This document shows, piece by piece, positions 1 through 59,233 of a stretch of 62,000 nucleotides of DNA (its first letter is position 1; every line of letters begins with the position of its first letter). The notes below the pieces were generated by a model. It did no database searches. It was not told where the DNA came from and saw only the letters and a list, made by a program, of their open reading frames with translations. A program made the translations under genes and the position numbers. Source of the DNA: Octopus vulgaris (Eukaryota); assembly GCA_951406725.2 (NCBI GenBank), contig OX597819.1, positions 25,254,001-25,316,000 of the forward strand, in the 5' to 3' direction.

Positions 1-667
1 CGAAAACGGGAGAGGGTGACTGAATTTGTAAAAGTATTTATATGAAATTAAATGAAAAATAAAGGAAAAAAAAAAAAAGGGAGAGAGAGGGAGAGAGAAT
101 GGGTAGACAGAGACAAAGAAGGTAGAAAGAGTCGATAAAAGAGAAAAAGAAAACTAAGGGAGCACTTTTCATTGTATAATGCATTATATACATGAACACG
201 GACAAATGTGTGTGTCTGTGTGTGTACGTGTGTTTGTGAGTATGTGTGTGTGTGTACGTGTGTTTGTGTGTGCGTGTGTATACTCTTCCAGCATGAAGTT
301 GCATTGAACTCTTTTATGCTTTTGTATCACATGAGCAAAAACCACACACAGATACACACACGACCACACACACACACACACATACACACACACATACATA
401 CATGCACACACATGCAGACGCGCACACATGCCTCACTCACATAATTTTGTGCATTTACTCAGTGTGTAAATTGATCACTACTTCAACAAGTGTAACGGAG
501 TCCATGTTTCACTGACGAGGTCATTAGACCGAAACATTCCTAGAGTTATCTCCCATACCTGTCAGACGATATTAGTAATTTACTAAAATCGTATTTCTTT
601 CGAATCAGCTCAATAATCCTCCACCCATTAAATATGTTTCTAATAACTTAACTACAAGTAACATTTT

Positions 668-6974: not shown

Positions 6975-7273
6975 ATATTCGAGTTGCTTTTAATTCGAAA
7001 TTCAGCAACTTGGAAGCTTGGTTGGTTGGCCGGTTCGAGAATGGGAGTCTTGGTAGTCGGTCTTCTATGACAATTGAGTGTCCGCGCTAAGCTCGGCATC
7101 AATATGGTGCTGAAGAGGGAGCTCATCAGGACCAGGTTGTCTAAGGAGGGTCGCTTCGGCCCAGGGCGGATACGCAACAGGCAAAAGACTCTGTGTCGAG
7201 CTGTAGTGGGATCGCGCCTGTAAATAGTCGTCGGCTGGCAGCCTATCCGATATAATTGAACTCCAACCTTTTT
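6975..7273 (+). ncRNA. 7SL / SRP RNA copy (probably pseudogenised)
   Basis: Blocks matching metazoan 7SL: GTGTCCGCGCTAAGCTCGGCATCAATATGGTG, helix 6 CTGA-GAG-GGAG-CTC-TCAG, ACCAGGTTGTCTAAGGAGGG, helix 8 CAGG-GCG-GATA-CGC-AACAG, TAGTGGGATCGCGCCTGTAAATAG, and a TTTTT Pol III terminator at 7269-7273. The 5' boundary is approximate. Confidence 0.88.
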
Positions 7274-19497: not shown

Positions 19498-19918
19498 AGC
19501 GGCGGTGGAGGCAGCGGTTTTGGCGGCAGCGGCGGTGGCACCAGCGGTGGTGGAGGCAGCGGTGATGGCGGCAGCGGCGGTGGAGGCAGCGGTGGTGGAG
19601 GCAGCGGCGGTGGAGGCAGCGGCGGTGGAGGCAGCGGCGGTGGAGGCAGCGGCGGTGGAGGCAGCGGCGGTGGAGCGGCGGTGGAGGCAGCGGTGTTGGC
19701 GGCAGCGGTGGTGGGGGCAGCGGCGGTGGAGGCAGTGGTGGTGGCGGCAGCGGCGGTGGTGGCGGTGGAGGCAGCGGTCGTGGCAGTGGCGGTGGAGGCA
19801 GCGGTGGTGGCGGCAGCGGCGGTGGTGGCAGCGGAGGTGGAAGAAGCGGTGGTGGGAGTGGCGGCGGTGGTGGCAGTGGTTTTGGAGGCAGCGGTGGTGG
19901 TGGCGGCAGTAGTAGCAA
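19498..19918. repeat. GC-rich 15-bp repeat (GGCGGTGGAGGCAGC)n / (GGN)n array
   Basis: Direct inspection. Confidence 0.9.
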
Positions 19919-20124
19919 AACAACGACACCTATACCCGACAGAGCAATGAACACCACAGTTCCCTTTTAACCCCTAAAGCAACAGGGTTTTCATAGCCGG
20001 CACGTACACCTTTGATGAAAAGTTTGCTCGGGCAAAGTGGAGCTGGGGCAATACAACAACATGTGCACAAAAAACCAATTAAGTTTGTACTAAAATATCT
20101 AAAGAAAAAGGTAAAGAGTCAAAA

Positions 20125-20456: not shown

Positions 20457-20528
<72 letters not shown>

Positions 20529-20554
20529 AAAAAAGCAACAAGAATGGATTAAAA

Positions 20555-20642
20555 TCTCGGTACGATCGTTTCGTACGAGGACATCTTTAATAAGCTACAA
20601 AAAATGCAGTGAATACAGATGGCTCGTACTCGTCAGCCGAAA
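20555..20642 (-). ncRNA. Type I hammerhead ribozyme (left arm)
   Basis: Exact reverse complement of 21912-21999. Confidence 0.8.
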
Positions 20643-21911
20643 AAAATATCAGAGAATTCCCAAACATCAAAAGGGGTAGATACAAAAGAGGTTGTAAGAT
20701 TAACTGCATTGAAGAAAGTTCGATTCATGGAGATCCGATGAAAGGTTTTAAACCTATAGAATTTATGCATGTCTACATATAGCTCATATTGAATATTTGA
20801 TCAAGTTGTATGAAGAAATTTTCGGATACAGTCATGCAAAATTTCTGAAAATCCGAGTAAGAGGCAAAGTGACTGCCACATCATGTAGAGGAAAGTCTGA
20901 GTAAAAACATAGTGACTGTCATATCGTGTAGAGGAACAGATTGTTATTGAAATTTACAAGAATCGCAGATAAGTTCGATTTTTTGGAGATCTGATGAAAA
21001 GGTCTTGAACTTACAAAATTTGTGTATGTCCTTATAGTTCGTAATCCAGTTTTGTGGAGAGATTTAGGGTACAATCATGCGAAAATATCAGGGAGTCCGA
21101 ATGAGAAGCAAAAATGACAGTCTTATATTGTAGTGGTTCAGGTAGTTAATGAAATTTTCAAGAATCACAGAAAGAGGAGGAAGGGGGTAGGAATTTAATC
21201 AGTTACTGCTATTTAAGCTGTCAAAGAGAAAGGAAAGGGGAAGCTAAGGGGATGGGCACAATTTGATACTGACAAAAAAGTCTAAGTTTGTTTGGAACAA
21301 ATTCGAACTGAGGTCAACAATTTATTTCTTTATTTATAAATGTTACTATTAATAGATTGTCAGGTTACAAAGAGGTCATTAGAAAGGAAAGAAAAATGGG
21401 GTTGTTATTAAATGAAATTAAACTATTATATTATTATTATACTAAACTATAATACATACATAATGTTATTAAATGAAATTAAACAATTATATTAATATTA
21501 TACTAAACTATAATACATTACACTATATTATATTATATTATTTTGATATATTCCATCACAATACACTACGATAGGTCTGGTATTAGCAGAATTAATTTTT
21601 AAAAGTTTAAAAGAAATTAAGAGAATTAACTAACTAATATTTGTAATGGGATAAAAAATAGACTAAGAAATGGAGATAAAAATAGAGCAAAATTTAATTT
21701 ATTAATAATATGGTCCAATAGAAATAAATCAAATAATTTAAGTCAATAAGTATTAAATAGTACCATCAGAGAGAGAAAAATTATAATCATAGCTAGTTAG
21801 AACTTATCTTTCCAGTTAAATATATAATATACTATGTAGGAGTGATATGTAAGTCAAAATGAATTTTATGTAAAATAATTCCAGTATACAGTTATCAATT
21901 GAGATATATTT

Positions 21912-21999
21912 TTTCGGCTGACGAGTACGAGCCATCTGTATTCACTGCATTTTTTGTAGCTTATTAAAGATGTCCTCGTACGAAACGATCGTACCGAGA
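21912..21999 (+). ncRNA. Type I hammerhead ribozyme (right arm)
   Basis: Helix I TTTCGG(21912-17)/CCGAGA(21994-99); core CTGACGA 21918-24; helix II GTACGA/TCGTAC; GAAA 21982-85; palindromic helix III ACGATCGT; cleavage triplet GTA, predicted cut after 21993. Confidence 0.82.
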
Positions 22000-22146
22000 T
22001 TTTAATCCATTCTTGTTGCTTTTTTCCTATTTATAATCACCCCACTTGTCGTATGGTTAACACCATATAGATATCCGGTGCATCCTAGTTAAGGACCATA
22101 TTCATGTGAATTCTTTAGAATTCACTAGAATCTCAATTACTTAACC

Positions 22147-22195
<49 letters not shown>

Positions 22196-28899: not shown

Positions 28900-31800
28900 T
28901 AAAATCAAAGATGGCGAACAAAAACCGTCCATCCGCTGAAAATAACAGCGGGGTATCCGCAAGACAGAAGTGCCGAGTTGAACAAGACAGCGACTGTTTA
29001 GCAACAACAACAAGATTAACGCACGTGGAACGTATGAAAATGAATTCCCCTTACTTCTTTCTTCCCTTTTACCACCGCAGAAACAAGAGAAGAAAATCAC
29101 TAAAACATCAACAACACAAGCGAAAACACTTCCAACGCCACCGCTACCACCGTTGCCAGCAGCAGCAGCAGTAATAGTAGTGGTAGCAATATCAACAATA
29201 CGAGAGACAGTTAGGGCAGCAGCAACAGCGCTGGTAACAACAACAACAACAACAGCGATAGCAAAGGTAACAACAGCGATAGCAAAGTTATCAACAACGC
29301 CAATAACACCAGCCAAAACAATTACAACAACAGCAGCAGAAGTAGTAGGAGCTGCAGCAGCAACAACAGCAACGACAGCAACAACAACAATGCCCACGTT
29401 ACCAGCAACAACAAAAACACTTTCGCAGCGGCAGTAGCCAAAATGAGACCACAATTCAGCCTAGGTCTCACAAACAAAGATGAAATGTTTGCTCAAGTCT
29501 GGAAACTCACCAAACAAGAGCTAACCTGGGCAAATCTAACTATTCCGGCAGGAGCCATCGAAGAAGTGGAGAGAAGGGCAGTATATTTCATATGCATCTT
29601 AGGACAGAAGAAAAAAGTGGCTTTAATAGCACAAGCAGATATTGAAGCTGCGCTGAGATGTATCAGGAATGACACCGAATACATAGCGAGAAGCTGACAA
29701 TACGACACCGTTTCTATTCTTTTGTAAGTCAGAAGCCCTCGCTATGAAGCACTCAATGACTCCTTGCAAAACCATCTAGATCATAATGGGAAAAAGAACA
29801 GCTCGTGTCGCATTCCCAGGATTCCACCAGAACTTGATAAGTGGTGGGTTCTGGGATGCTTAATCGAGCAAGGGTCAGATACTGTCCCAATGGAGGTGAC
29901 AAAAACTGCCAGGTAGGACTAGTTTGGGGTTGACCTGGAGATACTTCTCCAGATCGGACCAGAAAACGCAAAAAAATCTTGGAGGGTAATACACATAATG
30001 ACTGAAGGCAAAAGATCACATTGTTTCGTTTGTGGAGAAACAACCCATTTTCGAGCTTCTGCCATCAAGTGATAAAAGGTGCAAGGGATTGAAGGTCTCC
30101 ACTGCTGCCTACGCCGAGGTAAAGACCACAACCAGCACCAGCACCCCGATCGTGAAACCTATATCGAAACTTTTAAAGTGGTTCCCCCACCACTAATTAC
30201 GGAAGTCGAACCACCCGAACTTAACGAGACACTGGAAGGTGAGTAAACCTTTCTTCTCTCTTTTTAGCTTGCGAACATGACCATATTAAGAGTAGGAAAT
30301 TTAAATGTTCGACGACTATCAGATCTTTGCATCTGTTAGTCTGCCGAGAATGGGAAATGGGGTGGCAGTGCTGTTAAGGAATGATCTGGATCTCGCGATA
30401 AGGTCGATCTTCGGGACCTTTGACGGTAAATTGGTGGACCTGGACTTGAGCAATAGTGAAGGTGGTGCCTTCAGACTGGTGGCCGTATACGCCCCTACCG
30501 GTGCCAAACGGCCGAATTTCTTTAGGCGTTTCGACGCTTTTCTGGGTACGTCTCACCCTTCACTGTTAGTGGGAGACTGGGACCGTATCTTAGACGCACG
30601 CTGGGATTGTGTGGAAATAGCTGATAGAAGCATGGGGTACAAAAGTCTCAAGTACCTGATCAGCCAGTTCCAGCTGTCTGACAAGTACCGACGAGATTTC
30701 CGTAATGCGCCAGTGTGGACCTGCACCAACCGTATCGGGTCATCTAGATCGTTTATAGTCAGGATTTTCAGTAGGAAAATAACCAGTGACTGTGTAAAAT
30801 GTTCCCATTTTAAAACGGTCGTCTATTCAGATCCAGAGTTTGTAATCTGTACGATAGGCCTAGATAAGACGCGTAGGTAAGGACCCGGTTACTGGAAGCT
30901 GAACATGTCGTTTCTGCTACGTAAGGCGTACTGGGACCGGGTCAACAATTTAGTTAAGCAAAAGTTGACAGGGGTGGGGATTGCCAACAACAAGTGGTGG
31001 GGCCTCTCAAAAGAGAGATTGAAGTAATATCGATAGGGTTTAGCAAAGAAGTGGCGTTAGAAAAATAGAAAGGGAGATGAGCTAGTAGCTAAGTTAGACG
31101 AGGCTATTTGTAGTAGCATTGCAACCAACCTGCTAGCAGCGAGAATGGCATTAGACTATTTCTTCAATGTGAAACAGGAAGTTTGCGTTGTCAGAGCTAA
31201 GGCGCGTGATCTGAGAAACGAGGGTACAAAAGCTGTTCGATGGACCCAGGTGGCAGAGGCACAGCGTGGTAAAACAACAATTCGGTTTTTGACGAACCGA
31301 GAGTGATACGGGCTGAGCGATTCCTGGCAGATGTGTGAGGCCTTACATCAGCACTTTGCTCAGTTGTTCGCGAGGAGTAGCGGGTGAGAGATGGTAGCGG
31401 ATTTCAGTCATTACATCGACGGCTTTCCACGCCTCTCGACGGCTTTCCACGCCTCTCGACGGCTTTCCACGCCTCTCGACGGCTTTCCACGCCTCTCGAC
31501 GGCTTTCCACGCCTCTCGACGGCTTTCCACACCTCTAGACGGCCGACGCCGAGCGCTGCGAAAAGCAGATAGTTTCAACCGAAATTCAAGATGCCCTTCA
31601 GGATGCCCTTTTCGGATGGTCTGCCCTATGAGCTTCACGGAAATATGCCAGACTTGTTCAATCTCCTCGAAGCGCTCTACTGCAACTGGCTGCAGAACGG
31701 GTGTGCTCCCAGTTCTGTGAGCAGGGGTGTAGTGACGCTGATAAAGAAAGACGAAAACAAGAGTGGTACACTAGATAACTTCAAGCCCATAACTCTGCTA

Positions 31801-32260
31801 AACACAGAGTTTAAAATTTTGGCGAAGGTGTTAGCGAAGTGGTTGGCGCTTGTCGTCAACGATTTGGTTGGGGAGGCGCAAATCTGTGCAATCCCGACCA
31901 AGTCCATTCGCGACAACCTCCATCTAATGCGATACATCATAGAAAGGGTAAGGTGTAAACCTGGGGCTCTGATCAATTTAGATACATCGAAAGCATTCGA
32001 TAGAGTCGACCATCTGTACCTGTAGGCTGTTATCAAAGCAGTTGGCTTCGGCCCCGTCTTCAGAGGTTGGATCGCTTGCAATGCACAGTGGCATCTGTTC
32101 AGTGGTCAAAGTTAATGGCCACCTCTCGGAGCAGTTTCAGATCTCCGGATCGGTCCGTCAAGGGTGCCCTTACACCTCCTTTCTGTACGTATTGACTCTT
32201 CAGCCTTTATTGCAGAAGCTGGTGCAGCTGCAAGGCATTCCGCTCGAACCTGGTCGCAGA
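28900..32260 (+). mobile_element. L1/Tx1-like LINE, decayed, 3'-truncated within RT
   Basis: ORF1 remnants with CFVCGETTH knuckle; APE (GVAVLL..RLVAVYAP..LLVGDWD..SDPEFV); GPGYWKLN linker; RT (DGLPYE..ITLLNTEFKILAKVLA..LINLDTSKAFDRV..SVRQGCP). Many stops and frameshifts; no YADD motif. Confidence 0.9.
31417..31536. repeat. 20-bp minisatellite x6 (CGACGGCTTTCCACGCCTCT) inside LINE ORF2
   Basis: Direct inspection. Confidence 0.95.
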
Positions 32261-33445: not shown

Positions 33446-36400
33446 GCCGACTACGGCTGCTATAATGGTACGATTATAATTGTAACGGCAATGATGGCCG
33501 TCTCCCCACGAGCCAATCAAAGCTAAAAAATGATAACATTATCGTAGCACCAAAATGTTTTTGGAAACTAAAAGGAAAACTAAATCAGTATACCAAATCG
33601 CTTGTCCTATGGTTAATCTGGAAGCGCGTCCTCCAGGGAAGAGCCAGCCTGGGATCGAAAAGTCATCAACTGGCACAAACTCTTCTCCGAATACGGACAT
33701 GGATGGTCACTTGAACGGGAAATCCCCCAAATCGAGCCCTCCAAGTTCACCACCACAACCACCACAGAAAGAAAAATGTAAGCGGAACAAATGGACCCGA
33801 GAAGAGTATAAAGAAGTAATATACGCTTATTACTATGCATTAGGTAGGCCATCTCAAGAGAGACACACCGCAAACTCTTACAGTATATGGAGAACACGGA
33901 ATCAAGACAGTAGGCCCTATTTGGACGAGAACAAATTAGCAAATGTGAGGAGGGATATCTTTAGAAATAACAGACTCACAGACAGTGAAATAAGCGCGAT
34001 CAAGCACGCAACGGAAAATGACATAAATATAAGACACAAAGGAAATGAAGAAGCAAATGAACAGTATAGCCCACCACGAGGCTTAATTGAAAGACTGCCA
34101 TCTGACCAAAGTACGCAAAGGCCTGAAGATACAAGAAATTCTATTGTACCTGTTAAAGATAGCCAGGAAAACGAAAGAACAACAGTAACTGAAGATCTCG
34201 CATTTGCTGAAGAACACAGAGAGTCTATAGCAGAAATGAGGCAGAAAATCCTGAATACGCTTGAAGTTGTAAGACATACAAGTATGAATGATAGAGAACC
34301 GCTTCATAAACTCTCAAATACAAACCAAAATAAAAAACAAATCCAAATTGGCAACTATGTAACAAATGAAATAATACGAGAATTAAAACCTGATTTTACT
34401 GAGTTAAATGAAATTATTTACGCTTCTGCTAGGGCAATTGAAACCAGCTGTATGCCCCCGAAAAAACAAAGAAAACAAAACCTGGGAAGAAATCAAACTT
34501 GGAGAAGTAAAATTGAAAAAGAGATTGAATTTATGAGAGGGGAAATATCAATATTAAATGAACTAATATGTGGAAATGATGTAAGATCCAGAACAGGAAG
34601 AAAGATGAAGAGAAAATTTGGATCCTCACCAAGAGAAGAACTGATATCAATAAAAGAAACGCTGAAACAAAAAGTCCAAGCAAAAGCCCAAAGAATACGA
34701 AGATTTGAGAAGAGAAACAAGTTTTACAAGCAAAATAAGCTGTTCACATCCAATGCCAAAAAATTCTACAGAGAAATAGGGAAGGAGAAAGTAACCGTTA
34801 AAGACCCCCCTCCCATGGAAGAAGTTCAAAACTTTTGGAAAAGGATTCGGAGTGACAAGAAGACGTACAACATAAATGCAGACTGGATTATACAAACTGA
34901 AGGATCCTACCAAAATTTATAACAACAAGCATGGGAAGACATCACAATAGCAGACCTAAGAAAGGCACTCACGAAGGCCCATAATTGGAAATCCCCGGTA
35001 AAGATAGGGTGCCGAATTTCTGGCTCGCATCGCTCCCGTGCGCACACGGTAAGCTAGTTCAGCTGCTCAATGGAATTATGAGAGACCCAAAGAAAACACC
35101 TGAATGGTTAGCAAGTGGCATTACTTACCTACTCCCAAAGAATAACGAAACCAACCTTCCAAAAAACTATCGGCCTATAACCTGTCTATCCACCACGTAT
35201 AAAATCCTAACATCTATCCTGGCGGAGAAAACATATGCATTCATGGAGAAGAACGATATTTTCCCCATTGAACAAAAAGGGTGCCGCCGAGGCTCTTACG
35301 GATGCAAAGATCAACTGCTAATCAATCGTATGATCCTTGAGAACTGTCACAACAAGCGCAGAAATCTCAGCACCGCATGGATTGACTATAAAAAGGCCTT
35401 CGACAGTATACCGCATCCATGGATCTTGAGATCGCTGGACATCTTCAAAATTTCCCCTGTGATTTCAAACTTCCTGAAGCACAATATGTCGTTGTGGAAT
35501 ACGAATCTCCAATTATACCAATCTAATGGAGTACTTGCCTCAGAAAATATAAACATCAACTCTGGAATTTTTCAAGGTGACTCAATTTCACCTTTAATAT
35601 TCTGCATAGCCCTAATACCCCTTACAAGTGAATTAAACAGAACAGGGTATGGGTATAAAATTGCCAATAAAAAAATAAGCCATCTATTTTATATGGATGA
35701 CTTAAAACTTTATGGTAAAGACAATAATGAACTTGAAGGCCTATTGCGCACCGTGAAATCATTCAGCGATGACATCGGGATGGAGTTTGGACTTGAGAAG
35801 TGTGCCAAGGCCACTTTCCAGAAAGGGAAAGTGAAGACCACAAATTCAGTCGTGTTAGATGTTGACACAGTCATAAGAGAGCTTGAGCAAGAACAAACAT
35901 ACAAATATTTAGGGATAAATGAAGGCTCTGGTATTCAGCATGCAAGCATGAAAGAGAAAATCAGGAAGGAATGTTATAGGAGAGTTCGTGCAGTCCTGAA
36001 ATCTGAACTAAATGCACGTAACAAGGTGTTAGCTATAAATTCCCTAGCAGTTCCAGTTGTTACTTATAGCTACAATGTGTTGAACTGGAATATGAGTGAA
36101 GTAAAGAATATAGATAGAAAAATACGCAAGCTGCTGAGTTGTAATAGGATGCACCACCCAAAGGCAGACGTAGATCGCCTTTACCTTCCCAGAGCCCAAG
36201 GAGGTCGAGGCCTGATCCAATTTGAACTAGCTTACAAAACAACCACAATTGGACTGGCCAAATATCTCGAAATATCGAATGACTGGATGCTAAAGCTCGT
36301 GGAAAATCACGAGAGGCGAAAGAAGCTTCATTCTATCATCAAGGAAAGCAAAAAATTTGCTATTGATCTCGTGCAGGATACCCAAACTGAACAACCCGAG

Positions 36401-37419
36401 GGAAGTACGGCAACTATTGCTGCAAAGAAGGTGAAAATGATGGCAATGAAAAAAGCGCACGAGCAATTGGCTGATAGGTGGGAGGAGAAACCTCTGCACG
36501 GCAAATATGTGACCCGCAGCAAACAAGCTGATGTTGACCAGAAGCAAACCCATCAGTGGCTGCGGAGCTCAGGGCTAAAAGCAGAGAGCGAAGGTTTCAT
36601 CCTGGCTGCTCAAGACCAAAGCCTATCAACCCGGAACTACCAGGCCAATGTGATGAAAAATGGAGCAGACCCAAAATGCCGATTCTGCAACGACATGATT
36701 GAAACAGTGGACCACCTTATCTCTGGATGTAAAGTCTTAGCACCAGTGGAGTATAAATTAAGACATGACAGAGTTGGCCAATATCTCCACTGGCTAATAA
36801 GTCGGCATTACAATATCAAAACTGCCGACAAGTGGTATAATCACCACCCTGAGGCTGTAACTGAAGGAGAAAATGTAACCATTCTGTGGGACTTTCCAGT
36901 ACATACAGACCGAACCATCAAGGCCAATAAACGAGATATTGTTGTGAAAGACCAAAACAATAAAGTTTGCTTATTGATCGACATGAGCATCCCCTGTGAT
37001 CATAATATCTCAGGGAAAGAGTTTGACAAGCTCAGAAAATATAAAGACCTACTCATTGAAATTGAGAAAATGTGGCATCTCAAGGCGGTTACAATACCAG
37101 TGATCGTAGGAGCACTAGGAATGATCAAGAATGGAACCGAAAATTATATGAGAATGATCCCTGGCTTACCATCCCTGCAAGAAGTGCAAAAGATTGTCTT
37201 AACTGGTACATCACACGTATTGAGAAGAGCGTTGTCGATGTGAGAACTGTTGCTGCTCATGCATTTTAATTTAACTTAAAAAAAAAATAAAAAAAAATGA
37301 ACGAACTACTGAGTTTGGTTTAATGGCCTACCAATATACACTATGAGTTTCTTTGCCCCAGGAGTCGGGAAGACACTCGGCAAGAAATGGAAGAAAATTT
37401 GAAAGAAGAAAAAAAAAAG
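33446..37419 (+). mobile_element. R4/Dong-like non-LTR retrotransposon (RLE class), near full length, flanked by (TAA)n
   Basis: One long ORF with RT, CCHC and restriction-like endonuclease; (AAT)n arrays at 33191-33445 and 37420-37445. Confidence 0.92.
33555..37243 (+). pseudogene. RT/RLE polyprotein (~1230 aa if repaired): stop at 34920-34922, 1-bp frameshift at ~34995
   Basis: RT motifs QKGCRRGSYGCKDQL, IDYKKAFDS, GIFQGDSISP, HLFYMDDLKLY, FGLEKCA, YKYLGI; CRFC..ETVDHLISGC; WDFPVHTD..NKRDIVV..LIDMSIP. The ORFs at 33555 and 34985 join through QQAWEDITIADLRKALTKAHNWKS(P)GKD. Confidence 0.92.
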
Positions 37420-44497: not shown

Positions 44498-45584
44498 TCG
44501 GAGAAATCGCGCCTGTTTGAGATTATCTCCCTTCTCAGCGGAAGTTACTCGTAATTTCAACAAACCGTTTATTTATTCGTGTCTCAAAAAGGAAAATACT
44601 TTTCATAAGTCAAAAATTTAACTTGCATGGTTCATTTATCCTCACTTATCACTTATTTGTTAATCCCTGATCCGGGATAACACAGTGCACTCATTGTAAT
44701 TCGCATTACGCTTATCATAAATTTATTTCTGATAACACTGGCCGCAGATCAGTCGAAGATTATTCTTGGCCAACAAAAGCCCGCTCCATCAACCATCCGC
44801 AGTGCTCATAACAACTTGGAATCTCGGAAGGAAATCCATTTTCCCATATGTTCTATCATATCATTCAGTTATCACTAATTCCTTTAATGCAGCGTATTAA
44901 TATACATGTATTTAATAGATCTTCATTCGTCTTTATTACTCGTACGTATCTGTACATAAAAAAAAGGACAAGTCAAAAGAGCCTGGAGGATTGTGTGCAT
45001 GCAGTACAGCACAGAAGGAACTGGAGTGACCAAGCAAGTCGACCAGTGGCCACATTTGGCCGAATTAAAACTAATTAGAATCAACGTAGAATCAACTAAT
45101 TAGAATCGACGCCTCACATATTCTCACTATCCTTATCTAAGTTAGTCTTCTATTTCAGTTTCAACCTTATCCTAATCACTTTATCTCCGTATGGCTTCCA
45201 GTTAAGCTGGACTAGAGTGTTTTTCTAATATACATGTATGCGTGTGTGAGTGGATATGTATGTGTGAGTACGTACATGCACACATATGTTTGTGTGTGTA
45301 TATGTGCATGTACGTATACATGGTTGTGTTTGTACGTATGTAGACGTTATGAACGCAGGAGGTTTATGTCTATATATTATGAGACTATATATAGTTGCGT
45401 GTATATATATATATGGTTGCGTGTATTCTTTATCCTTTATCTTCATTTTGTTTTTCTACCTATTAGAATAAATTCCCTTTTATTCAACGGTTTTTCATAG
45501 CGTCTATTGTCATTAATAGCCGACGAGAATGCATCGTAGCTCTTCGCTCCGACATTCGAAACTCCGAACACTACAATGACATGG

Positions 45585-46083
45585 ATGTTTCTGGGTCTTA
45601 ACCCGTCGTCAGCCCAGGATAGTGAGATCTGCTGATTGAGGCGACTGTCACGTTAAGTTGACAGTATACAACCACTCTATTGCTCCACCACCGCTCAAGT
45701 CTCTTTGAGACATTTAGAAATTCAATATTTCTAATTACGGTGACCAGTGAATAGATTTCACTGTAAATATATATGTTTGTGAAGGCTAGATAGGCGCCTC
45801 AATCAGCATATCTCACTATCCTGGGCTGATGACGGGTTATGGCCTAGAAACATGCGTGTCCTCAGGTGTGAATCTTGGCTGGTAGGGATGCTTGTCCCCC
45901 CATTCACAAATTTAAAGACACAGAAAATGTGTCAAAGCCGAAGGAAGCGTTCGATGCTTCCTAGGGATAAACAGCGGTGGTGTAATTCCCATACGGGACT
46001 GTCAAGTTAATTTGACAGTATACAATCACTCTATCACTCCACCACCGCTCATGTCTCTTTGAGACATTTAAAAATTTAATATT

Positions 46084-46086
<3 letters not shown>
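45585..46086. mobile_element. Small composite element: inverted hammerhead-bearing repeats plus direct repeats (Penelope-like architecture)
   Basis: 45585-45643 is inverted relative to 45795-45853; 45644-45732 is directly repeated at 45998-46086. Confidence 0.6.
45820..45866 (+). ncRNA. Type I hammerhead ribozyme candidate
   Basis: Helix I CCTGGG/CTCAGG; CTGATGA 45826-32; C-GGGT-TATG-GCCT-A; GAAA; helix III ACA-TGCG-TGT; GTC cleavage triplet at 45858-60. Confidence 0.65.
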
Positions 46087-46130
<44 letters not shown>

Positions 46131-46393: not shown

Positions 46394-46509
46394 GGGCTAC
46401 ATAGACATTCGTTTCTTTGAAACAGTTATAGTTGTTACATTTGGAAAAAGGAACGGCTACGTAAGGCTCCCACGTTGTCTTAGTTATGCTATAGAGTTGT
46501 TGAGAGTGG

Positions 46510-48500
46510 CAGTAGTGTGTTGTGATGAAGGTATCAGTGGGAGTGTGTGTTGTGATGAGGGTAGCAGTGGGAGTATATATTGTGATAAAGGTAGCAGTGG
46601 GAGTGTGTGTTGGGATGACGGTATCAGTGGGAGTGTGTGTTGTGATGAGGGTATCAGTGGGAGTGTGTATTGGGATGAGGGTAGCAGTGGGAGTGTGTGT
46701 TGTGATGAGGGTAGCAGTGGGAGTGTTTGTTGTGATGAGGGTATCAGTGGGAGTATATATTGTGATAAAGGTAGCAGTGGGCGTGTGTGTTGTGATGAGG
46801 GTAACAGTGGGAGTGTGTATTGTGATGAGGGTAGCAGTGGGAGTATTTGTTGTGATGAGGGTATCAGTGGGAGTATATATTGTGATAAAGGTAGCAGTGG
46901 GAGTGTGTGTTGGGATGACGGTATCAGTGGGAGTGTGTGTTGTGATGAGGGTATCAGTGGGAGTGTGTATTGTGATGAGGGTAGCAGTGGGAGTGTGTAT
47001 TGTGATGAGGGTAGCAGTGGGAGTGTTTGTTGTGATGAGGGTATCAGTGGGAGTATATATTGTGATAAAGGTAGCAGTGGGCGTGTGTGTTGTGATGAGG
47101 GTAACAGTGGGAGTGTGTATTGTGATGAGGGTAGCAGTGGGAGTATTTGTTGTGATGAGGGTATCAGTGGGAGTATATATTGTGATAAAGGTAGCAGTGG
47201 GCGTATGTGTTGTGATGAGGGTAACAGTGGGAGTGTGTATTGTGATGAGGGTAGCAGTGGGAGTGTTTGTTGTGATGAGGGTATCAGTGGGAGTATATAT
47301 TGTGATAAAGGTAGCAGTAGGAGTGTGTGTTGTGATGACGGTATCAGTGGGAGTGTGTGTTGGGATGAGGGTAGCAGTGGGAGTGTTTGTTGTGATGAAG
47401 GTATCAGTGGAAGTGTGTGTTGTGTTGAGGGTAGTAGTGGAAGTATGTGTTGTGAAGAAGGTAGCAGTGAGCAGTAGGAGTGTGTGTTGTGATAAAGGTA
47501 TCAGTGGGAGTGTGTGTTGTGATGACGGTATCAGTGGGAGTGTGTGTTGTGATGACGGTACCAGTGGGAGTGTGTATTGTGATGACGGTATCAGTGGGAG
47601 TGTGTGTTGTGATGACGGTACCAGTGGGAGTGTGCATTGTGATGAGGGTAGCAGTGGGAGTGTTTGTTGTGAGGAAAGTATCAGTGGGAGTGTGTGTTGT
47701 GTTGTGGGTAGCAGTGGGAGTGTGTGTTGTGTTGAGGGTAGTAGTGGAAGTATGTGTTGTGAAGAAGGTAGCAGTGAGCAGTAGGAGTGTGTGTTGTGAT
47801 GAGGGTAGCAGTGGGAGTATATATTGTGATAAAGGTATCAGTGGGAGTGTGTGTTGTGATGACGGTATCAGTGGGAGTGTGTATTGTGATGAGGGTAGCA
47901 GTGGGAGTGTTTGTTGTGATAATGGTAGCAGTGGGAGTTATTGTTGTATTGAAAGTATCAGTGGGAGTGTTTGTTGTGATGAAGGTAGCAGTGGGAGTAT
48001 ATATTGTGATAAAGGTAGCAGTGGGAGTGTGTGTTGTTATGAAGGTATCAGTGGGAGTGTGTGTTGTGATGAGGGTAGCAGTGGGAGTGTTTGTTGTGAT
48101 GAGGGTAGCAGTGGGAGTGTGTGTCGTGTTGGACGTAGCAGTGGGAGTGTTTGTTGTGATGAGAGTAGTAGTGGAAGTATGTGTTGTGAAGAAGGTAGCA
48201 GTGAGCAGTAGGAGTGTGTGTTGTGATAAAGGTAGCAGTGGGAGTATATATTGTGATAAAGGTATCAGTGGGAGTGTGTGTTGTGATGAAGGTATCAGTG
48301 GGAGTGTATGCTGTGATGAGGGTAGCAGTGGGAGCGTTTGTTGTGATGAGGGTAGTAGTGGGAGTGTGTGTTGTGTTGATCGTAGCAGTGGGAGTGTTTG
48401 TTGTAATGAGGGTAGTAGTGGAAGTATGTGTTGTGAAGAAGGTAGCAGTGAGCAGTAGGAGTGTGTGTTGTGATAAAGGTAGCAGTGGGAGTGTGTGTTT
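46510..48500. repeat. 30-bp minisatellite (GGGAGTGTGTGTTGTGATGAGGGTAGCAGT), ~66 units, higher-order structure
   Basis: Direct inspection. Confidence 0.95.
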
Positions 48501-48914
48501 GTAATAATGATAGCAGTGTGTGAGCGTATGTGCATGTGTGTGTGTGCGTGTGTGTATGTGTGTGTGTGTTGTAATGATAACGCTAATAACGTTGGTGATG
48601 GTTGTTACGCAGATTAATGTATGTTGGTTGGGGATGTTAGTTGTTATAAAAAACAGAGGCGGTGGTAGTTGCAGGGCTGAGTTCGGAGATGAATGGGGCT
48701 AGTGGAAATAGAAGTCGTTGTAACGTTGTTGTGGGATGAATATTGTGATGAATGAACGTGTTGACTTGCGTTAATCATATTGGTAGCTGCATTGGAAACC
48801 ATAGTAATATTTGTGAGCTTTTTGAAGGTGGTCGTAGAGTGACGACAGCTGTTATGATGTAGCGGTGGTAAGAGTAGTGGTTGTAATTACAATGGTGTGT
48901 TTTGAGATGAAGTT

Positions 48915-51802: not shown

Positions 51803-54289
51803 TTATTTATCTTCAGCTCAGCTCTTCGAGATAAAGGTAGTAGTACTAGATACGGTGGAGGTGGACGTGATGGTCAAGTAGCTAACTTATATTCTTCTGC
51901 AATTGTCACTTAGAGTGTCCGCTTGATCTGAATCTCTTGGTATCTGAGATACAAGGAGGAAAAAAGCCATTCGATGGGCCCAGTTGACAGAGGCGTAACA
52001 TGGCAGCAAAGCAACGATTCGGTTTTTGGCAGGCCGTAATGGGCGCATGTTACTCGACTCCAAACGGAGATACTGAAACTGCGACATGTCCAGCATTTCA
52101 TTGACGATTAGCAGGTGCGGTTGCAGTTTGTTAGCCTCACTTTTCTGCAGCTCGTCTCTTTGACTGAGATGCAGTACTGGATCAAGCATAGACTGAGACA
52201 GGGTGTCTGGTGCCTAGTGTATCGTTAGGTAAAGACGCTAAAGTTTTCGAAGCAGTTGTCCGTGAATATCCTTTTCATCTTCGATTTTGAATGTAACGTT
52301 TAAATCTGATAAGTAGATGACATTCATAGCAGTATGTAGATGTATAACCAACGTACAGGAGGTGTAGTTTCCGAAATAGTTATCTTTAATATTCATCTAC
52401 TCGTTGATTTTATAAAGAAAATAAAAAGTGCTCACCTGAAGAGTAGATGAACTTTAGCGCTCAATTTCAATTAGTAGTTGTCCTGAGGAACAATGTGGCT
52501 ACATTGAATCCTAGATTTTGCATCGTGCTGCTGTTTCTTATAGAATTTAGTTATCAAGCAGCTGTTTTATACAACAGTTCATTTCCTTATTTTTCTCAGT
52601 CTGCTCAAGAGCAATGGTCCTGCAGATACAGATTACGACACCCAGTTCATATTATATACCTGACGTTCTGGAAGGTTACAATATGGCAATGTTTAGCAGA
52701 GATAATTGATGGGAATCAAAAAGTGGATGGGGGTAGTCAATTAGAGAGATCGTACGTACCCTTCATTCACTTTTGACACAAAATAATCTGATAATTATGG
52801 TTTTAGGTGACATATCAATATCCTGTTATAAGGCATGGGTTTCGTGAGTTTTTGTTTGATACTTTGTTTAACATCTTCTTAAAATGCTATGGCGTTTATT
52901 ATGTATAGTCCTTGTTGTTTACCTTAGATCTAGCCCGATCATGTAGAGCTATGATGAAAGATATTCCATTCATGACAATTCTGTTTTATTCAGACATTGT
53001 GTGTCTTGGTCTACATTGCTCTATATATCATTATAATTTGACGATTAGCAGGTGTGGTCACAGTTTGTTAGACTCACTTTTCTGCAGTTCATCTCTTTAA
53101 CTGAGCTGCAGTCCTGGATCAAGCGTAGACAGACGACCATGATTTCGAGAAGACTAATTCTAACAAATTGAACGATCACATAGAGACTCCCTCATTTGAG
53201 GGACTGATGCTGGAAGGATGTAATGTATTCGTCATCCTTTCACACACAGTTTGCAGTAGACTCTCAAGATTTTCCTTCCATTCAATTTCCTTGTCATTTA
53301 ACTTGTCAATTCTTCCCCGTATAGACTTCCAGGAGATTTCAGCTTGTACAGTTGATAAGTATATGTCATTTTCAGCTCTTACATCTATCTAATGGGATAT
53401 CTTTTACAGTAATGATTCTGCTTTATTATGTTCAAACTATGGCAGACAGATTTAGAATATTTCATGAACAGATTATTTAGTCATTTGCTTTCAAAATACG
53501 TAGGTTTGTATTTTCGACCTTCATCACTAGCAAGCTCCTGTTTCAAGTTATGCAGGCTATAACTTAAAATTCTAAATACAGGTTGTAATTTAAGATTTCA
53601 CGTTCCGTGTCTCCAAACAGTTCTAAGAATTCTTTTATTCATTTCTGAAGGTTAGTAAATGTATTAACTGTGTTACTATTTATATGTATTGTAACGTATC
53701 ATGTATAAATAAGTGAGGATTTGTGTATGCATGTATGTGTATGTGTGTATATGTATGTATGCTAGCTTGTATGTTTGTATGTATATATATGTAAGTATTT
53801 ATGTATATATGCATGGATATGTGTCTGTCTGATTGAACATACGTGTGTGCATATATATGTATTCATGAAAGAAATTCCAGCTTAGACTGATTTTCCTGTT
53901 TCATTATTTGCAATTTTTACAATTTTACAATTTAAGAATATTGAAATAAACTAGTACTTTCATGCACTACGCAACCACCAGGTTTATGTAGTGACAGTCG
54001 TGTTCCGCAATTGACAACTGTAGTGAAATCGTTGGGTTTATCCTTTAAATACCCCCCGATGTGCTTCAGCAGGCTGAATCTTACGAACTGTGTTTTGACC
54101 AATCAGTATGTGGCTTAGATATCACGGTTTGGTAAGCAAGACAACTGAGTTCTAGGGTAAGTATTTCGACCAATTAGTATGTGACTTAGACGTCACGGTT
54201 TGGTGAGCACGTCAAGGATAATTTACTCTGGTCGCACCTAAAGAAATAATTGTTTGGCTATATTTTGCAATGCTGTAAACAAAATTACT

Positions 54290-56320
54290 GTTTTCTTCGA
54301 AAATTTTCCCTTACACTCAATAATAATGTTAGGCCAAATACTAAGAAATCAGAGATATCTGCACTTAAACGCCTACAAAACGATAAAACAGAAATCATTA
54401 AGCAAGCAGATAAAGGGGGTGCAATTGTTATAATGGATGCAGAATACTACAGGGATTTAGTTGAGGACCAATTGTAGGACACAACATTCTTCTGTGAAAT
54501 ACCTGCAAATATAGACCACCGCATCATGAAAAAAGTCAATAACCTGGCTTAAAAACAATACAACTCACTCAACATTGACGAAAGAGACTACATTACCAAT
54601 TTCGAACCAAAACCCAGCAACTTCTATGGCTTACCAAAAATACACAAGTCAAAAGAAATTCAAACATGCAGTAAAGGAACAAGAAAGTGAGTGCTTAAAA
54701 TTACTACACCCGAAAGACCTAAAACTCAGACCTATTATAGCTGGTTCACTATGCCCTACATAGATACGCATACATACATACATACATACATACATACATA
54801 AATACTCACTTATGTATACACGATACGATACAATACATATAAATATTAACAGTTAATAAGTTTACTAACCTTCAGAAATGAATAAAAGAATGCTTAGAAC
54901 AGTTTGGAGACACGAGACGTGAAACCTTAAATTACAACCTGTATTTAAATTTATTGACATAATATTGACACCATTTTGAAACCATTATGTACCCACATGC
55001 CTAGTTTCATCCTGGATGATATCGACTTCCTGTCCCACCTTCCCAAAACAACGGAATCAAATTAACCTTTACTTAGTTTTGATGTAGTAAGCATTTCTAC
55101 CAATATTGCACATAATTTAGGAATAAAGGCGATTAAATACCGGGTGGAAAAACATAAAGTGATTCCCAGTAGATTCACGGTGCCATTTATATTAAACGCT
55201 GTCCAACTTATTCTTGAATATAACACATTCTTTTTCAATTGAAAGAACTACATTCAGGTTAGAGGCACAGCAATGGGAACGAGATTTGCTCACGTTTATG
55301 CGAACGCCGCAATAGGATATTTAGAAAACAACTCTATCAAAGAGTAGAGGAAATCTACGGCATTGAATTTAGAAGGTATATTGAAGATGCACGGAAGAGA
55401 TATCTTGACGATTGCTTCATAATCAGGACAAACTCTCTAGATAATCTGGAAGAATTTAATAACCTCCTGAACAACCTGCACCTAACTCCCCAATTACAAA
55501 GGAGATGAATAATAACAAATTACCATTTCTAGACATAATGATGATTAAAAAGTGATATCAACATCACCACTGATATGTACAATAAACACACAGACACGCA
55601 CCAATACCTGAACTTTAAAGCGTGCCATCTAGCACATAAAAAACGCAATATCCCATACTGCCTAGCCAGGAAAATTTGTACCATTGTGAAAGATGTAAAT
55701 ACTAGAGACAAACGCCTAACAGAACTCAAAGAATTTCTCCTTACACAAAAATGGCCTGTCTCTACTTATAGAAAATGGTATACAGCGTGCTATAGAAATA
55801 CTCATACAACGTAGGGCAACCCCCAAAAAGAGGAAAACAAGAACAAGTCACACTATTTATAGTGACACACAATCCGTGTCATCAAAATATCTTTAGCATT
55901 GCACAAAGCAAACTTACCGATCATTGCTCAAAGTAATAAATTAAAGGATATAATCACAGATCGTGCTATGATTCCAAGTAAAAGAAAGCCGAAGAACTTG
56001 AAACAATTATTAACAAAGGCAAAGATTGATCTAAGCAACAATGACGAATCATCAATCGCATCTAAATGCAATGATAATCGCTGTGGTACATGTCAATTAA
56101 CACACGCCGGTCAATATATGAACACAAAAATCAGAAGAATATTTTCCAATGGAAATATGAACTGCAAAAGCAGAAATTTAATTTACTGCATCAAATGCTC
56201 GAATTTTGCAGATATATACGTTGGTCAGACTGGAAATGCATTGCGGGAACTTCACCCAAGAGTAGGGTGTCATTCTTCTCTACAGTCCAATAGAGAAAGT
56301 GAACCCATTACTGCATGATA
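54290..56320 (+). mobile_element. Penelope-like element (RT + GIY-YIG), decayed
   Basis: KQADKGGAIVIMD, FYGLPKIHK, LRPIIAG, SFDVVS, GTAMG, RYLDDCF, LPFLDI, YNKHTDTHQYLNF, NLIYCIKC..YVGQT; many stops and frameshifts. Confidence 0.9.
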
Positions 56321-58825: not shown

Positions 58826-59150
58826 AAGACTTTAAAACATTTTTAACGATCAGTTACACTTATCTCGGTACCAACTTTGCTTTCAATGCCAGTTAACGAA
58901 AAAAAGTCCAAGTGAAAATTTACGTAATATTTACGGTTTTAAATATTCATGGCACTTCTTCAGACCTGCATCAAAGATGTACTCTTACATTAACCTACCT
59001 TTGATGAAGGTCTGAGGAAGCGCCACTCTAATGTTTAAAATCGCAAATGTTACGTAAGTTTTCAGTTGGAACTTTTACGTGAACCGACGTTGAAAGCTAA
59101 GTTGGTACAGAGATAATTGTACCTGATAATTAAAGATGTGTTAAAATCTT
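58826..59150. mobile_element. MITE-like element with ~60-bp imperfect TIRs
   Basis: 58826-58886 is inverted relative to 59091-59150. Confidence 0.6.
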
Positions 59151-59171
59151 CCTTTGTATTTTTATTTGGAT

Positions 59172-59233
<62 letters not shown>

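What the first reader, a model, noticed from the sequence alone, without database searches (positions are those of the whole stretch)
20524..22030. 1.5-kb non-coding element capped by two identical, outward-facing hammerhead ribozymes
Seen: two 122-bp arms that are exact reverse complements, each holding a complete canonical type I hammerhead. It has core CUGACGA/GAAA, a 6-bp helix I, a perfect 6-bp helix II with a 45-nt insert that can pair further (CATCT/AGATG), a self-complementary helix III (ACGAUCGU) and a GUA cleavage site. The interior is AT-rich and ORF-free, with a diverged ~255-bp tandem duplication (from ~20716 and ~20971). (TA)n tracts flank it at 20470-20523 and ~22148-22190. Known: Penelope-like elements carry hammerheads in their terminal repeats, palindromic helix III allows dimeric folding, and retrozymes have direct or tandem hammerhead repeats. 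Inference: a transcript from either strand would be cut near the far end (after 21993 on +, at 20561 on -). A full-length transcript could also form a 122-bp panhandle competing with ribozyme folding, a built-in switch. Arm identity implies recent mobility of a non-autonomous ribozyme-bounded element with inverted geometry.
Basis: partly seen in the sequence, partly recalled or inferred. Interest (0 to 1): 0.9.

Follow-up and report, generated by a model that had tools for sequence, protein, structure and literature searches.

The report
Penelope-type hammerhead insertion with inverted repeats
The two mirror-image hammerhead ribozyme arms are real, but an insert bounded by inverted ribozyme-bearing repeats in a (TA)n microsatellite is the known footprint of Penelope-like retrotransposon integration, so this is an ordinary new example rather than a new kind of element.

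Summary
Arms 20519-20645 and 21909-22035 are 127-nt reverse complements with one mismatch. Each carries a complete type I hammerhead motif (21912-21999 on +, 20555-20642 on -). A full descriptor matches only these two sites and none of 200 shuffles. The predicted dimer is the classic double hammerhead. The interior is non-coding, with a real diverged ~255-bp tandem duplication.

Long helix II, G10.1-C11.1 and a small palindromic helix III are the published hallmarks of Penelope-like element (PLE) hammerheads. Inserts "bounded by inverted pLTRs", with 8-10 bp target duplications, (TA)n preference and non-PLE DNA mobilised in trans, are already described. PLE protein is reported to cleave and extend both DNA strands.

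The window also holds a decayed PLE (54250-56318) and a second, unrelated hammerhead locus (45415-46088) with the same inverted-copy geometry abutting (TA)n.

My best reading (about 0.7): one PLE-mediated integration of a non-coding, hammerhead-tailed RNA plus a 5'-truncated inverted copy. The inverted geometry is a by-product of integration, not a designed switch. A lone hammerhead of this type is expected to cleave poorly.

No other copies could be retrieved, because the source genome is not in the searchable collections. Novelty: new member of a known kind; interest low.

The parts
20468..20526 (.). Perfect (TA)29 microsatellite directly abutting the left end; likely target site. Its last 8 nt (20519-20526, TATATATA) are the left copy of a putative 8-bp target-site duplication.
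   Evidence: Only 2.0% of window positions lie in or within 3 bp of a (TA)>=6 tract.
20527..20645 (-). Left arm: inverted, 5'-truncated copy of the element's 3' terminus (pLTR-like). It is 119 nt and 100% complementary to 21909-22027.
20555..20642 (-). Hammerhead motif of the left arm, the mirror of 21912-21999. Predicted cleavage is 3' of the base complementary to 20561.
20646..21908 (.). Non-coding interior, 1263 nt, 28% GC (36% in the first half, 21% in the second). No ORF, no tRNA, no other copy in the window. Its orientation relative to the arms cannot be decided from this locus alone.
20716..21180 (+). Diverged tandem duplication of about 255 bp (units at ~20716-20970 and ~20971-21180), 74% identical with indels. 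It is older than the arms.
   Evidence: alignment A1
21403..21518 (+). 61-bp tandem repeat, 1.9 copies, 96% identical, in the AT-rich half of the interior.
21909..22027 (+). Right arm: 3' terminus (pLTR-like) carrying the sense hammerhead for + strand transcripts. It ends ...GCTTTTTTCC.
21912..21999 (+). Type I hammerhead motif. Helix I 21912-17/21994-99; core CUGACGA 21918-24; helix II 21925-31/21975-81 with a 43-nt structured insert 21932-74; GAAA 21982-85; palindromic helix III 21985-92; A17 at 21993 (cleavage after it).
22028..22035 (.). TATTTATA: right copy of the putative 8-bp target-site duplication, matching TATATATA at 7 of 8 positions. Only 1.2% of window 8-mers match that well.
22036..22147 (.). 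Unique 112 nt between the right arm and the next (TA)22 tract (22148-22191). Unresolved: ordinary flank, or an over-long 'tail'/extra fragment of the insertion.
   Evidence: no match elsewhere in the element or window

Best explanation
This is the product of one Penelope-like-element (PLE) type retrotransposition into, or at the edge of, a (TA)n microsatellite. A non-coding RNA of about 1.39 kb with a PLE-type hammerhead 34-42 nt from its 3' end was reverse-transcribed at the target.

PLE protein is reported to nick and extend both DNA strands. A second, heavily 5'-truncated copy (about 119-127 nt, essentially just the hammerhead and 3' end) was therefore laid down in inverted orientation at the other side. 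That gives outward-facing identical arms and probably an 8-bp target-site duplication.

The body is one of two things, not resolved here: (a) a non-autonomous PLE parasite or captured non-PLE DNA mobilised in trans through its pLTR-like 3' module, or (b) a copy truncated inside an unusually long non-coding pLTR.

The hammerhead is inherited PLE pLTR baggage. With one sense copy per strand and a 2-bp monomeric helix III, it should cleave poorly unless two transcripts dimerise.

Shown: the repeat, the motif, the non-coding interior, the (TA)n context, PLE remnants and a second locus with similar geometry in the window. Inferred: PLE mobilisation, a single event, and low ribozyme activity.
For: 1. 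The hammerhead has the published PLE/metazoan signature: long helix II (7 bp), a G10.1-C11.1 pair, and a small palindromic helix III/loop 3 that forces dimeric action (PMC4209133). The motif was verified, and the dimer minimum-energy fold (-60.4 vs 2 x -27.2 kcal/mol) is a double hammerhead with an intermolecular ACGAUCGU helix.
2. The geometry matches the published PLE anatomy: pLTRs direct or inverted, an inverted 5'-truncated copy at the 5' end, a 30-40 bp tail, and (TA)n preference (PMC8557442). It also matches inserts bounded by inverted pLTRs, 8-10 bp TSD or none, 0.9-1.5 kb captured spacers, and a host gene mobilised in trans between pLTRs (PMC3846280).
3. Mechanistic basis: purified PLE protein cleaves and extends both top and bottom strands (PMC11167929).
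4. The left end abuts (TA)29. The flanking 8-mers TATATATA/TATTTATA match 7 of 8.
5. The same window contains a decayed C-terminal-EN PLE at 54250-56318 with ADKGG, YLDD, thumb, a CX4CxxC linker and GIY-YIG. Its homologues carry PF01541.
6. A 55%-identical relative on a Tara scaffold (L001) has a minimal hammerhead with palindromic helix III about 160 nt (core at 849, stop at 689) past its stop, and the contig ends in TA repeats.
7. An independent hammerhead family at 45415-46088 shows a partial tandem plus an inverted copy, with both ends abutting (TA)n.
8. The interior has no coding remnant. It is therefore not simply the 3' end of an L001-like autonomous PLE, where the ORF ends about 160 nt before the hammerhead.
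Against: - No autonomous PLE carrying this particular arm sequence was found. The source genome is not in the searchable collections (best LINE RT hit 68%, best EN hit 55-69%), and an exact 22-mer of the arm gave 0 hits in viral, metagenome and prokaryote collections.
- The arms show no significant similarity to the other hammerhead-like loci in the window.
- The window's own PLE has lost its 3' end, so its hammerhead cannot be compared.
- The TSD is ambiguous in TA-rich sequence.
- The 112 nt between the right arm and the next (TA)n tract is longer than the published 30-40 bp tail.
- No Rfam support, though the controls show that test has no power here.
- Only two identical copies exist, so there is no covariation evidence for the fold.
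Confidence: 0.7

Rival explanations
1. One reading: a distinct class of non-autonomous, ribozyme-bounded element in which the inverted hammerhead arms are a functional design. Each strand's transcript is trimmed at its far end, and the 5'/3' panhandle acts as a switch competing with ribozyme folding.
For: Arms are perfect and each holds a complete motif. A full-length transcript is predicted to form the panhandle. The interior is non-coding.
Against: The geometry is fully accounted for by known PLE integration and recurs at an unrelated hammerhead locus in the same window. Any perfect inverted repeat forms a panhandle. A single PLE-type hammerhead with palindromic helix III is expected to be nearly inactive as a monomer. 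Hammerhead catalytic mutants do not affect PLE insertion in vitro.
Confidence: 0.08
2. A cut-and-paste DNA transposon or MITE with ~119-nt terminal inverted repeats and a TA or 8-bp target-site duplication. Its TIRs happen to derive from, or mimic, a hammerhead sequence.
For: Perfect TIR-like arms, a non-coding interior, and flanks compatible with a TA or 8-bp TSD.
Against: The termini (GGAAAAAAGC...) do not fit hAT (YARNG) or Tc1/mariner terminal motifs; this rests on established knowledge and reading. A complete three-helix hammerhead placed 34-42 nt from each terminus, where PLE 3' ends carry theirs, is unexplained by a TIR function. No second copy and no transposase remnant occur in the window.
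Confidence: 0.07
3. Two independent insertions of a very short (~120-130 nt) hammerhead SINE-like element in opposite orientations, flanking 1.26 kb of ordinary host DNA.
For: Both arms end at the same inner point, as full-length copies of a tiny element would. The interior looks like AT-rich intergenic DNA with local tandem repeats.
Against: No other copy of the arm occurs in 62 kb, so two copies 1.3 kb apart, 100% identical and exactly outward-facing, would be a coincidence. Only the outer ends look like target junctions.
Confidence: 0.05
4. An assembly artefact or local rearrangement: PLE tandem/inverted structures are known to mis-assemble, so the inverted arm could be a mis-join.
For: Craig et al. 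note that such structures 'often lead to problems in WGS assemblies'.
Against: The interior is unique and non-palindromic. The arms end cleanly at TA-rich junctions with a plausible TSD. [quoted passage not shown]
Confidence: 0.05

Closest known systems
Penelope-like element (PLE) insertions bounded by inverted pseudo-LTRs, e.g. Adineta vaga Pen2/Pen5/Pen6 and the trans-mobilised NRPS gene (PMC3846280); general PLE anatomy in PMC8557442
   Same: Terminal repeats in inverted, head-to-head orientation with both element 3' ends facing outward. One arm is a shortened copy. Arm length is in the 100-200 bp range. TSD is about 8-10 bp or unclear. Insertion is at a (TA)n microsatellite. The hammerhead lies inside the repeat near the terminus. 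The interior need not be PLE sequence.
   Different: No RT/GIY-YIG ORF lies between the arms. There is no direct pLTR partner. Homology of these arms to an autonomous PLE of the same genome could not be shown. The possible 'tail' would be 112 nt rather than 30-40 nt.
PLE-type and metazoan type I hammerheads with small palindromic helix III (Cervera & de la Pena 2014, PMC4209133)
   Same: Type I topology, CUGANGA/GAAA core, G10.1-C11.1, long helix II (7 bp), palindromic 15.x-16.x/loop 3, and a predicted double-hammerhead dimer.
   Different: Helix II is capped by a 43-nt structured insert instead of a short loop. [quoted passage not shown] Helix I is a full 6 bp. Core halves 35-50 nt apart have only been noted as 'HHR_half_core' in some Naiads.
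Metazoan non-LTR retrozymes (PMC7229834; 2026 preprint 10.64898/2026.07.22.740005)
   Same: Non-coding, AT-rich, type I hammerhead, thought to be non-autonomous derivatives of PLE pLTRs. Solo monomers exist.
   Different: Retrozymes are 170-400 nt units in direct tandem, so that two sense hammerheads excise a unit that is then circularised. Here the unit is about 1.4 kb with one sense hammerhead per strand and an inverted partner, so no unit-length excision is possible. The 45.4-46.1 kb locus in this window is closer to a retrozyme than the finding is.
L1 twin priming / 5' inversion
   Same: A second priming event on the other DNA strand creates an inverted segment at the 5' side of a retroelement insertion.
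   Different: In L1 the inverted piece is internal sequence, not a second copy of the 3' terminus. The enzyme is an APE-type EN rather than GIY-YIG.

Membership tests
Hammerhead ribozyme, type I | Conserved catalytic core C3-U4-G5-A6-N7-G8-A9 and G12-A13-A14, with an A15.1-U16.1 pair and an NUH cleavage triplet | tested here: met
   CUGACGA at 21918-24, GAAA at 21982-85, A21985-U21992, and GUA with H17 = A21993
Hammerhead ribozyme, type I | Three helices around the core, with helix I open | tested here: met
   Helix I is 6 bp, helix II is 7 bp plus an insert, and helix III is 2 bp plus a GAUC loop as a monomer or 8 bp as a dimer. 0 of 200 shuffles match the descriptor.
Hammerhead ribozyme, type I | Match to curated covariance models (Rfam hammerhead families) | tested here: inconclusive
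   No hit at E<=10. The same search also misses the hammerhead motifs downstream of PLE EN ORFs in L001/L007 and the 45826 motif.
Hammerhead ribozyme, type I | Covariation supporting the helices; self-cleavage | not testable with these tools
   Only two identical copies are available, and no relatives were retrieved. Cleavage needs a bench assay.
Penelope-like element (autonomous) | Single ORF with a telomerase-like RT plus a GIY-YIG endonuclease | tested here: not met
   The interior's longest stop-free stretch is 51 aa, and tblastn with PLE pieces gives no hit there. The element is therefore not an autonomous PLE.
PLE-type insertion (pLTR architecture, autonomous or trans-mobilised) | Terminal pseudo-LTRs, direct or inverted, carrying a hammerhead near the 3' terminus | tested here: met
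   119-127-nt inverted arms, with the hammerhead cut site 34-42 nt from each outer end.
PLE-type insertion (pLTR architecture, autonomous or trans-mobilised) | Microsatellite ((TA)n) target bias, variable TSD of about 8-10 bp, optional 30-40 bp tail | tested here: inconclusive
   The left end abuts (TA)29, and the putative 8-bp TSD matches 7 of 8 (p about 0.012 per 8-mer). The tail is not identifiable, and 112 nt of unexplained sequence lies on the right.
PLE-type insertion (pLTR architecture, autonomous or trans-mobilised) | Arm sequence homologous to the pLTR of an autonomous PLE in the same genome | not testable with these tools
   The source genome is absent from the collections, and the window's own PLE lacks its 3' end.
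Non-LTR retrozyme | Direct tandem repeats of 170-400 nt, each with a sense type I hammerhead, giving unit-length linear or circular RNA | tested here: not met
   There is one sense hammerhead per strand, the partner is inverted, the unit is about 1.39 kb, and the hammerhead unit is not tandemly repeated.
TIR DNA transposon / MITE | Terminal inverted repeats with superfamily-typical terminal motif and TSD | tested here: inconclusive
   TIR-like arms are present and a TA or 8-bp TSD is possible. The termini GGAAAAAAGC do not fit hAT or Tc1/mariner motifs, and no transposase is present.

The most novel reading that the evidence does not exclude
The locus is a full-length member of an undescribed family of long (~1.4 kb), non-tandem, non-coding parasites of Penelope-like elements. 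Its only cis requirement would be a ~120-nt 3' module containing a hammerhead with an expanded helix II. In this reading the inverted arm pair is retained because the panhandle gates ribozyme folding or feeds double-stranded RNA into small-RNA pathways.
Probability: 0.07. Interest if true: 0.55.

Novelty: new member of a known kind. Interest (0 to 1): 0.2.

Why it matters
As it stands, this is a clean, young textbook example of Penelope-type integration: an inverted 5'-truncated copy, a hammerhead in the terminal repeat, and a (TA)n target. It sits in an unidentified, microsatellite-rich animal genome; relatives of its LINE and PLE proteins come partly from marine samples. It is useful for repeat annotation and for marking such loci as prone to mis-assembly.

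Two details have modest specialist value:
- The inverted copy retains only about 119-127 nt. This delimits a candidate minimal 3' module that PLE machinery can copy.
- The hammerhead tolerates a 43-nt structured insert in helix II, so it escapes both Rfam models and standard descriptors. Censuses of PLE hammerheads therefore probably undercount this variant.

It does not open a new question about ribozyme-bounded mobile elements.

Tried and rejected
1. Rfam at gathering and E<=10 thresholds on the arms gave no hammerhead hit. I did not treat this as evidence of absence, because the controls showed the models also miss other PLE-associated and near-canonical motifs.

2. I searched for other copies with a gapped pattern and an exact 22-mer in viral contigs, metagenome contigs and genome contigs. 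All gave 0 hits.

3. I tried to reach same-species contigs through proteins. The window's PLE endonuclease piece gave only 40-69% relatives on contigs of about 1 kb or less. The intact LINE RT gave at best 68%. The source genome is therefore not in the collection and the organism was not identified.

4. The search for related loci with an EN alignment in metagenomes gave only 2 distant loci.

5. The hammerhead-like pair at 58800-59176 was considered as a decayed relative of the arms. I rejected this: it fails the full descriptor, position 17 would be G, helix I does not form, and its local similarity to the arms is not significant (p = 0.03-0.1). It looks like an unrelated palindromic MITE-like hairpin.

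6. I considered the interior as a decayed PLE ORF or tRNA-SINE and rejected both.

7. Pfam on the short PLE ORFs gave no hits because the fragments are too short. The domain call rests on homologues carrying PF01541 and on alignment A3.

8. The weak hammerhead-core strings at 512 and 37926 lack helix I/III and an inverted partner, and I dismissed them.

Full report
**Context.** The window is animal DNA. A metazoan SRP RNA gene scores 188.9 bits at 6986-7271. The sequence is very rich in simple repeats and carries LINE ORFs with RVT_1 and an APE-type endonuclease. The organism could not be identified: the best protein relatives of its intact LINE RT are 68% identical, and those of its Penelope-like endonuclease fragment are 40-69% identical, at least one from a marine (Tara Oceans) sample.

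- The repeat finder reports arms 20519-20645 and 21909-22035, 127 nt, 99% complementary, 1263 nt apart.
- Beyond the GG/CC at 20527-28 and 22026-27, the match is only TATATATA against TATTTATA. I take the arms proper to be 20527-20645 and 21909-22027 (119 nt, 100%), flanked by a possible 8-bp target-site duplication.
- On the + strand the right arm reads UUUCGG-CUGACGA-GUACGAG-[43 nt]-CUCGUAC-GAAA-CGAUCGU-A|CCGAGA. That gives a 6-bp helix I, a canonical core, a 7-bp helix II starting with G10.1-C11.1, the palindrome ACGAUCGU as helix III, and a GUA site with cleavage after 21993 (mirror 20561).
- A descriptor demanding all of these elements matches only the two arms in 124 kb of sequence and nothing in 200 dinucleotide shuffles.
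- The interior is 28% GC, with no stop-free stretch above 51 aa, no tRNA, and no other copy in the window.
- The ~255-bp tandem duplication is real at 74% identity. A 61-bp repeat and the two (TA)n tracts are also confirmed.

**The one negative.** Rfam's hammerhead models do not match the arms even at E<=10. I ran controls. The same search misses the minimal hammerheads that sit downstream of GIY-YIG ORFs on contigs L001 and L007. It also misses a near-canonical type I motif at 45826 in this window. The negative therefore has no discriminating power. Covariation cannot be assessed because the two copies are identical and no relatives were retrievable.

**Folding.**
- As a monomer, the minimum-energy structure keeps helices I and II and the paired insert, but mispairs core ACGA with UCGU. 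A hammerhead-compatible fold is 4 kcal/mol worse (-23.1 vs -27.2).
- Two copies co-fold into the classic double hammerhead, with an 8-bp intermolecular ACGAUCGU helix III (-60.4 vs -54.4 kcal/mol for two monomers).
- A full-length transcript pairs its arms (-221.8 kcal/mol for the duplex), as any perfect inverted repeat would.

**What it is.** The motif's peculiarities are those listed for Penelope-like-element and related metazoan hammerheads by Cervera and de la Pena (PMC4209133):
- a long helix II;
- G10.1-C11.1;
- a small palindromic helix III or loop 3;
- inferred dimeric action.

In that study single motifs showed no detectable cleavage in vitro, and dimers showed only weak cleavage.

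- Pseudo-LTRs 'may be direct or inverted'. [quoted passage not shown] Hammerheads lie in the pLTRs, a 30-40 bp tail may be present at one end, and (TA)n is a preferred target (PMC8557442).
- In Adineta vaga, whole inserts are 'bounded by inverted pLTRs' with 8-10 bp TSDs or none. Spacers of 0.9-1.5 kb of captured DNA occur. [quoted passage not shown]
- Biochemically, a purified PLE protein cleaves and extends both DNA strands, unlike R2 or L1, and hammerhead mutants do not affect insertion (PMC11167929).

Together these give a direct mechanism for two outward-facing element 3' ends.

**Local support from the window.**
1. A decayed canonical PLE lies at 54250-56318 (+). It has the ADKGG motif, YLDD, the thumb region, a CX4CxxC linker (the motif hypothesised to mediate microsatellite targeting) and a frameshifted GIY-YIG domain. 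Its homologues carry PF01541.
2. A 55%-identical relative on Tara scaffold L001 has a minimal hammerhead with palindromic helix III (AGUACU) about 160 nt after the stop codon (core at 849, stop at 689), and the contig ends in TA repeats.
3. A relaxed scan found a second, sequence-unrelated hammerhead locus at 45415-46088.
 - Its + strand hammerhead has helix I CCUGGG/CUCAGG, core CUGAUGA with the typical extra nucleotide, a 4-bp helix II, helix III ACA-UGCG-UGU, and a GUC site.
 - It lies in a partial tandem in which segment X (45645-45735) is repeated at 45998-46088.
 - It is preceded by an inverted copy sharing 72 nt at 88%.
 - Both ends of the locus abut (TA)n.
4. Only 2.0% of window positions lie in or next to a (TA)>=6 tract. 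Two hammerhead elements both sitting at such tracts is therefore not chance.
5. The 8-mers flanking the main element match 7 of 8, while only 1.2% of window 8-mers match TATATATA that well.

**Best explanation (about 0.7).** One PLE-mediated integration of a non-coding RNA with a hammerhead-bearing 3' end, plus a 5'-truncated inverted copy made from the other DNA strand.
- In the L001 relative the ORF ends about 160 nt before the hammerhead. Here 1.26 kb upstream is non-coding, so I favour a non-autonomous or trans-mobilised body. A copy truncated inside an unusually long pLTR is not excluded.
- Which arm belongs to the primary copy cannot be told from one locus.
- Identical arms show the insertion is young, or the arms are homogenised. 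The 74% internal duplication predates the insertion.

**Rivals.**
- A TIR DNA transposon (0.07).
- Two independent mini-insertions (0.05).
- Mis-assembly (0.05).

Evidence for and against each is given in the Rival explanations section.

**Comparison and novelty.**
- It works like, and is most simply filed under, PLE-type insertions with inverted pLTRs.
- It is not an autonomous PLE: the ORF test was not met.
- It is not a retrozyme in the defined sense: the tandem sense hammerheads test was not met.
- What is new is only the family itself, the long non-coding body, and the 43-nt structured insert in helix II. That insert hides the motif from Rfam and from ordinary descriptors. Widely spaced core halves have so far been noted only in passing in Naiads.
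- Verdict: new member of a known kind, with low interest.

**Limits.**
- No same-genome copies could be retrieved, and no autonomous partner was identified.
- There is no covariation evidence and no experimental evidence.
- The TSD is ambiguous in TA-rich sequence.
- The 112 nt at 22036-22147 is unexplained.

Noticed in passing
window 45415-46088: Second, sequence-unrelated hammerhead element. A near-canonical type I hammerhead lies on + (about 45818-45866, GUC site) within a partial tandem (segment 45645-45735 repeated at 45998-46088). It is preceded by an inverted copy with a hammerhead core on - (core start 45612). The inverted repeat is 45578-45649/45789-45860 (72 nt, 88%). Both ends abut (TA)n. 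It is retrozyme- or pLTR-like and is missed by Rfam.
   Followed up: yes
window 54250-56318 (+): Decayed Penelope-like element with several stops and frameshifts. It has the ADKGG motif, RT YLDD, thumb, a CX4CxxC linker, and a GIY-YIG domain frameshifted after GQTGNALRE. Its 3' end and hammerhead are lost in simple repeats.
   Followed up: partly
window 53568-53753 / 54769-54952: Inverted repeat of about 185 nt (86-91%), partly (CATA)n-like, bracketing about 1 kb that includes the N-terminal part of the decayed PLE. It could be another PLE inverted structure or an unrelated insertion.
   Followed up: no
window 58800-59176: Palindromic element of about 377 bp (arms ~177 nt, ~80% identical, 22-nt centre). 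Each arm contains CTGAnGA...GAAA strings and an exact GTACCGAGAT also present in the finding's arms. It fails the full hammerhead descriptor and has no significant similarity to the arms, so it is probably a MITE-like hairpin. Its right end is next to (TA)8(TG)n.
   Followed up: partly
window 6986-7271 (+): Full-length metazoan signal recognition particle RNA gene (RF00017, 188.9 bits, E = 5e-50). This shows the window is animal DNA.
   Followed up: no
window 33555-37243 (+): Apparently intact LINE with a 455-aa ORF1 and a 752-aa RT ORF (RVT_1, zf-RVT). The closest database proteins are only 68% identical. Thousands of relatives exist; one is annotated from the coral Oculina patagonica (58%).
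   Followed up: partly
window 30305-32025 (+): Second LINE fragment with an APE-type endonuclease (weak Exo_endo_phos hit) and the start of an RT (RVT_1).
   Followed up: no
window 19501-19952: Minisatellite with a 15-bp period, about 30 copies, GC-rich. It lies just upstream of the finding and reads as poly-proline/leucine in one frame.
   Followed up: no
window 46497-48535: About 2 kb of strongly GC-skewed (+0.65) tandem repeats giving long repetitive pseudo-ORFs (CDEGSSGSV-type). It starts about 400 bp downstream of the second hammerhead locus.
   Followed up: no
window 505-545 (+): GUUUC-A-CUGACGA-GGUC-AUUA-GACC-GAAAC: a hammerhead core with a 4-bp helix II and complementary GUUUC/GAAAC flanks, but no helix I. 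It has no inverted partner and is probably a decayed or chance motif.
   Followed up: partly
L001 849-890 (Tara Oceans scaffold TARA_SAMEA6053616_METAG-scaffold_180128): Relative of the window's PLE endonuclease (55% identity). It carries a minimal hammerhead downstream (CUGAAGA, bulge, CGUC-GAAA-GACG, GAAA, palindromic AGUACU), and the contig ends in TA repeats about 100 nt later.
   Followed up: partly
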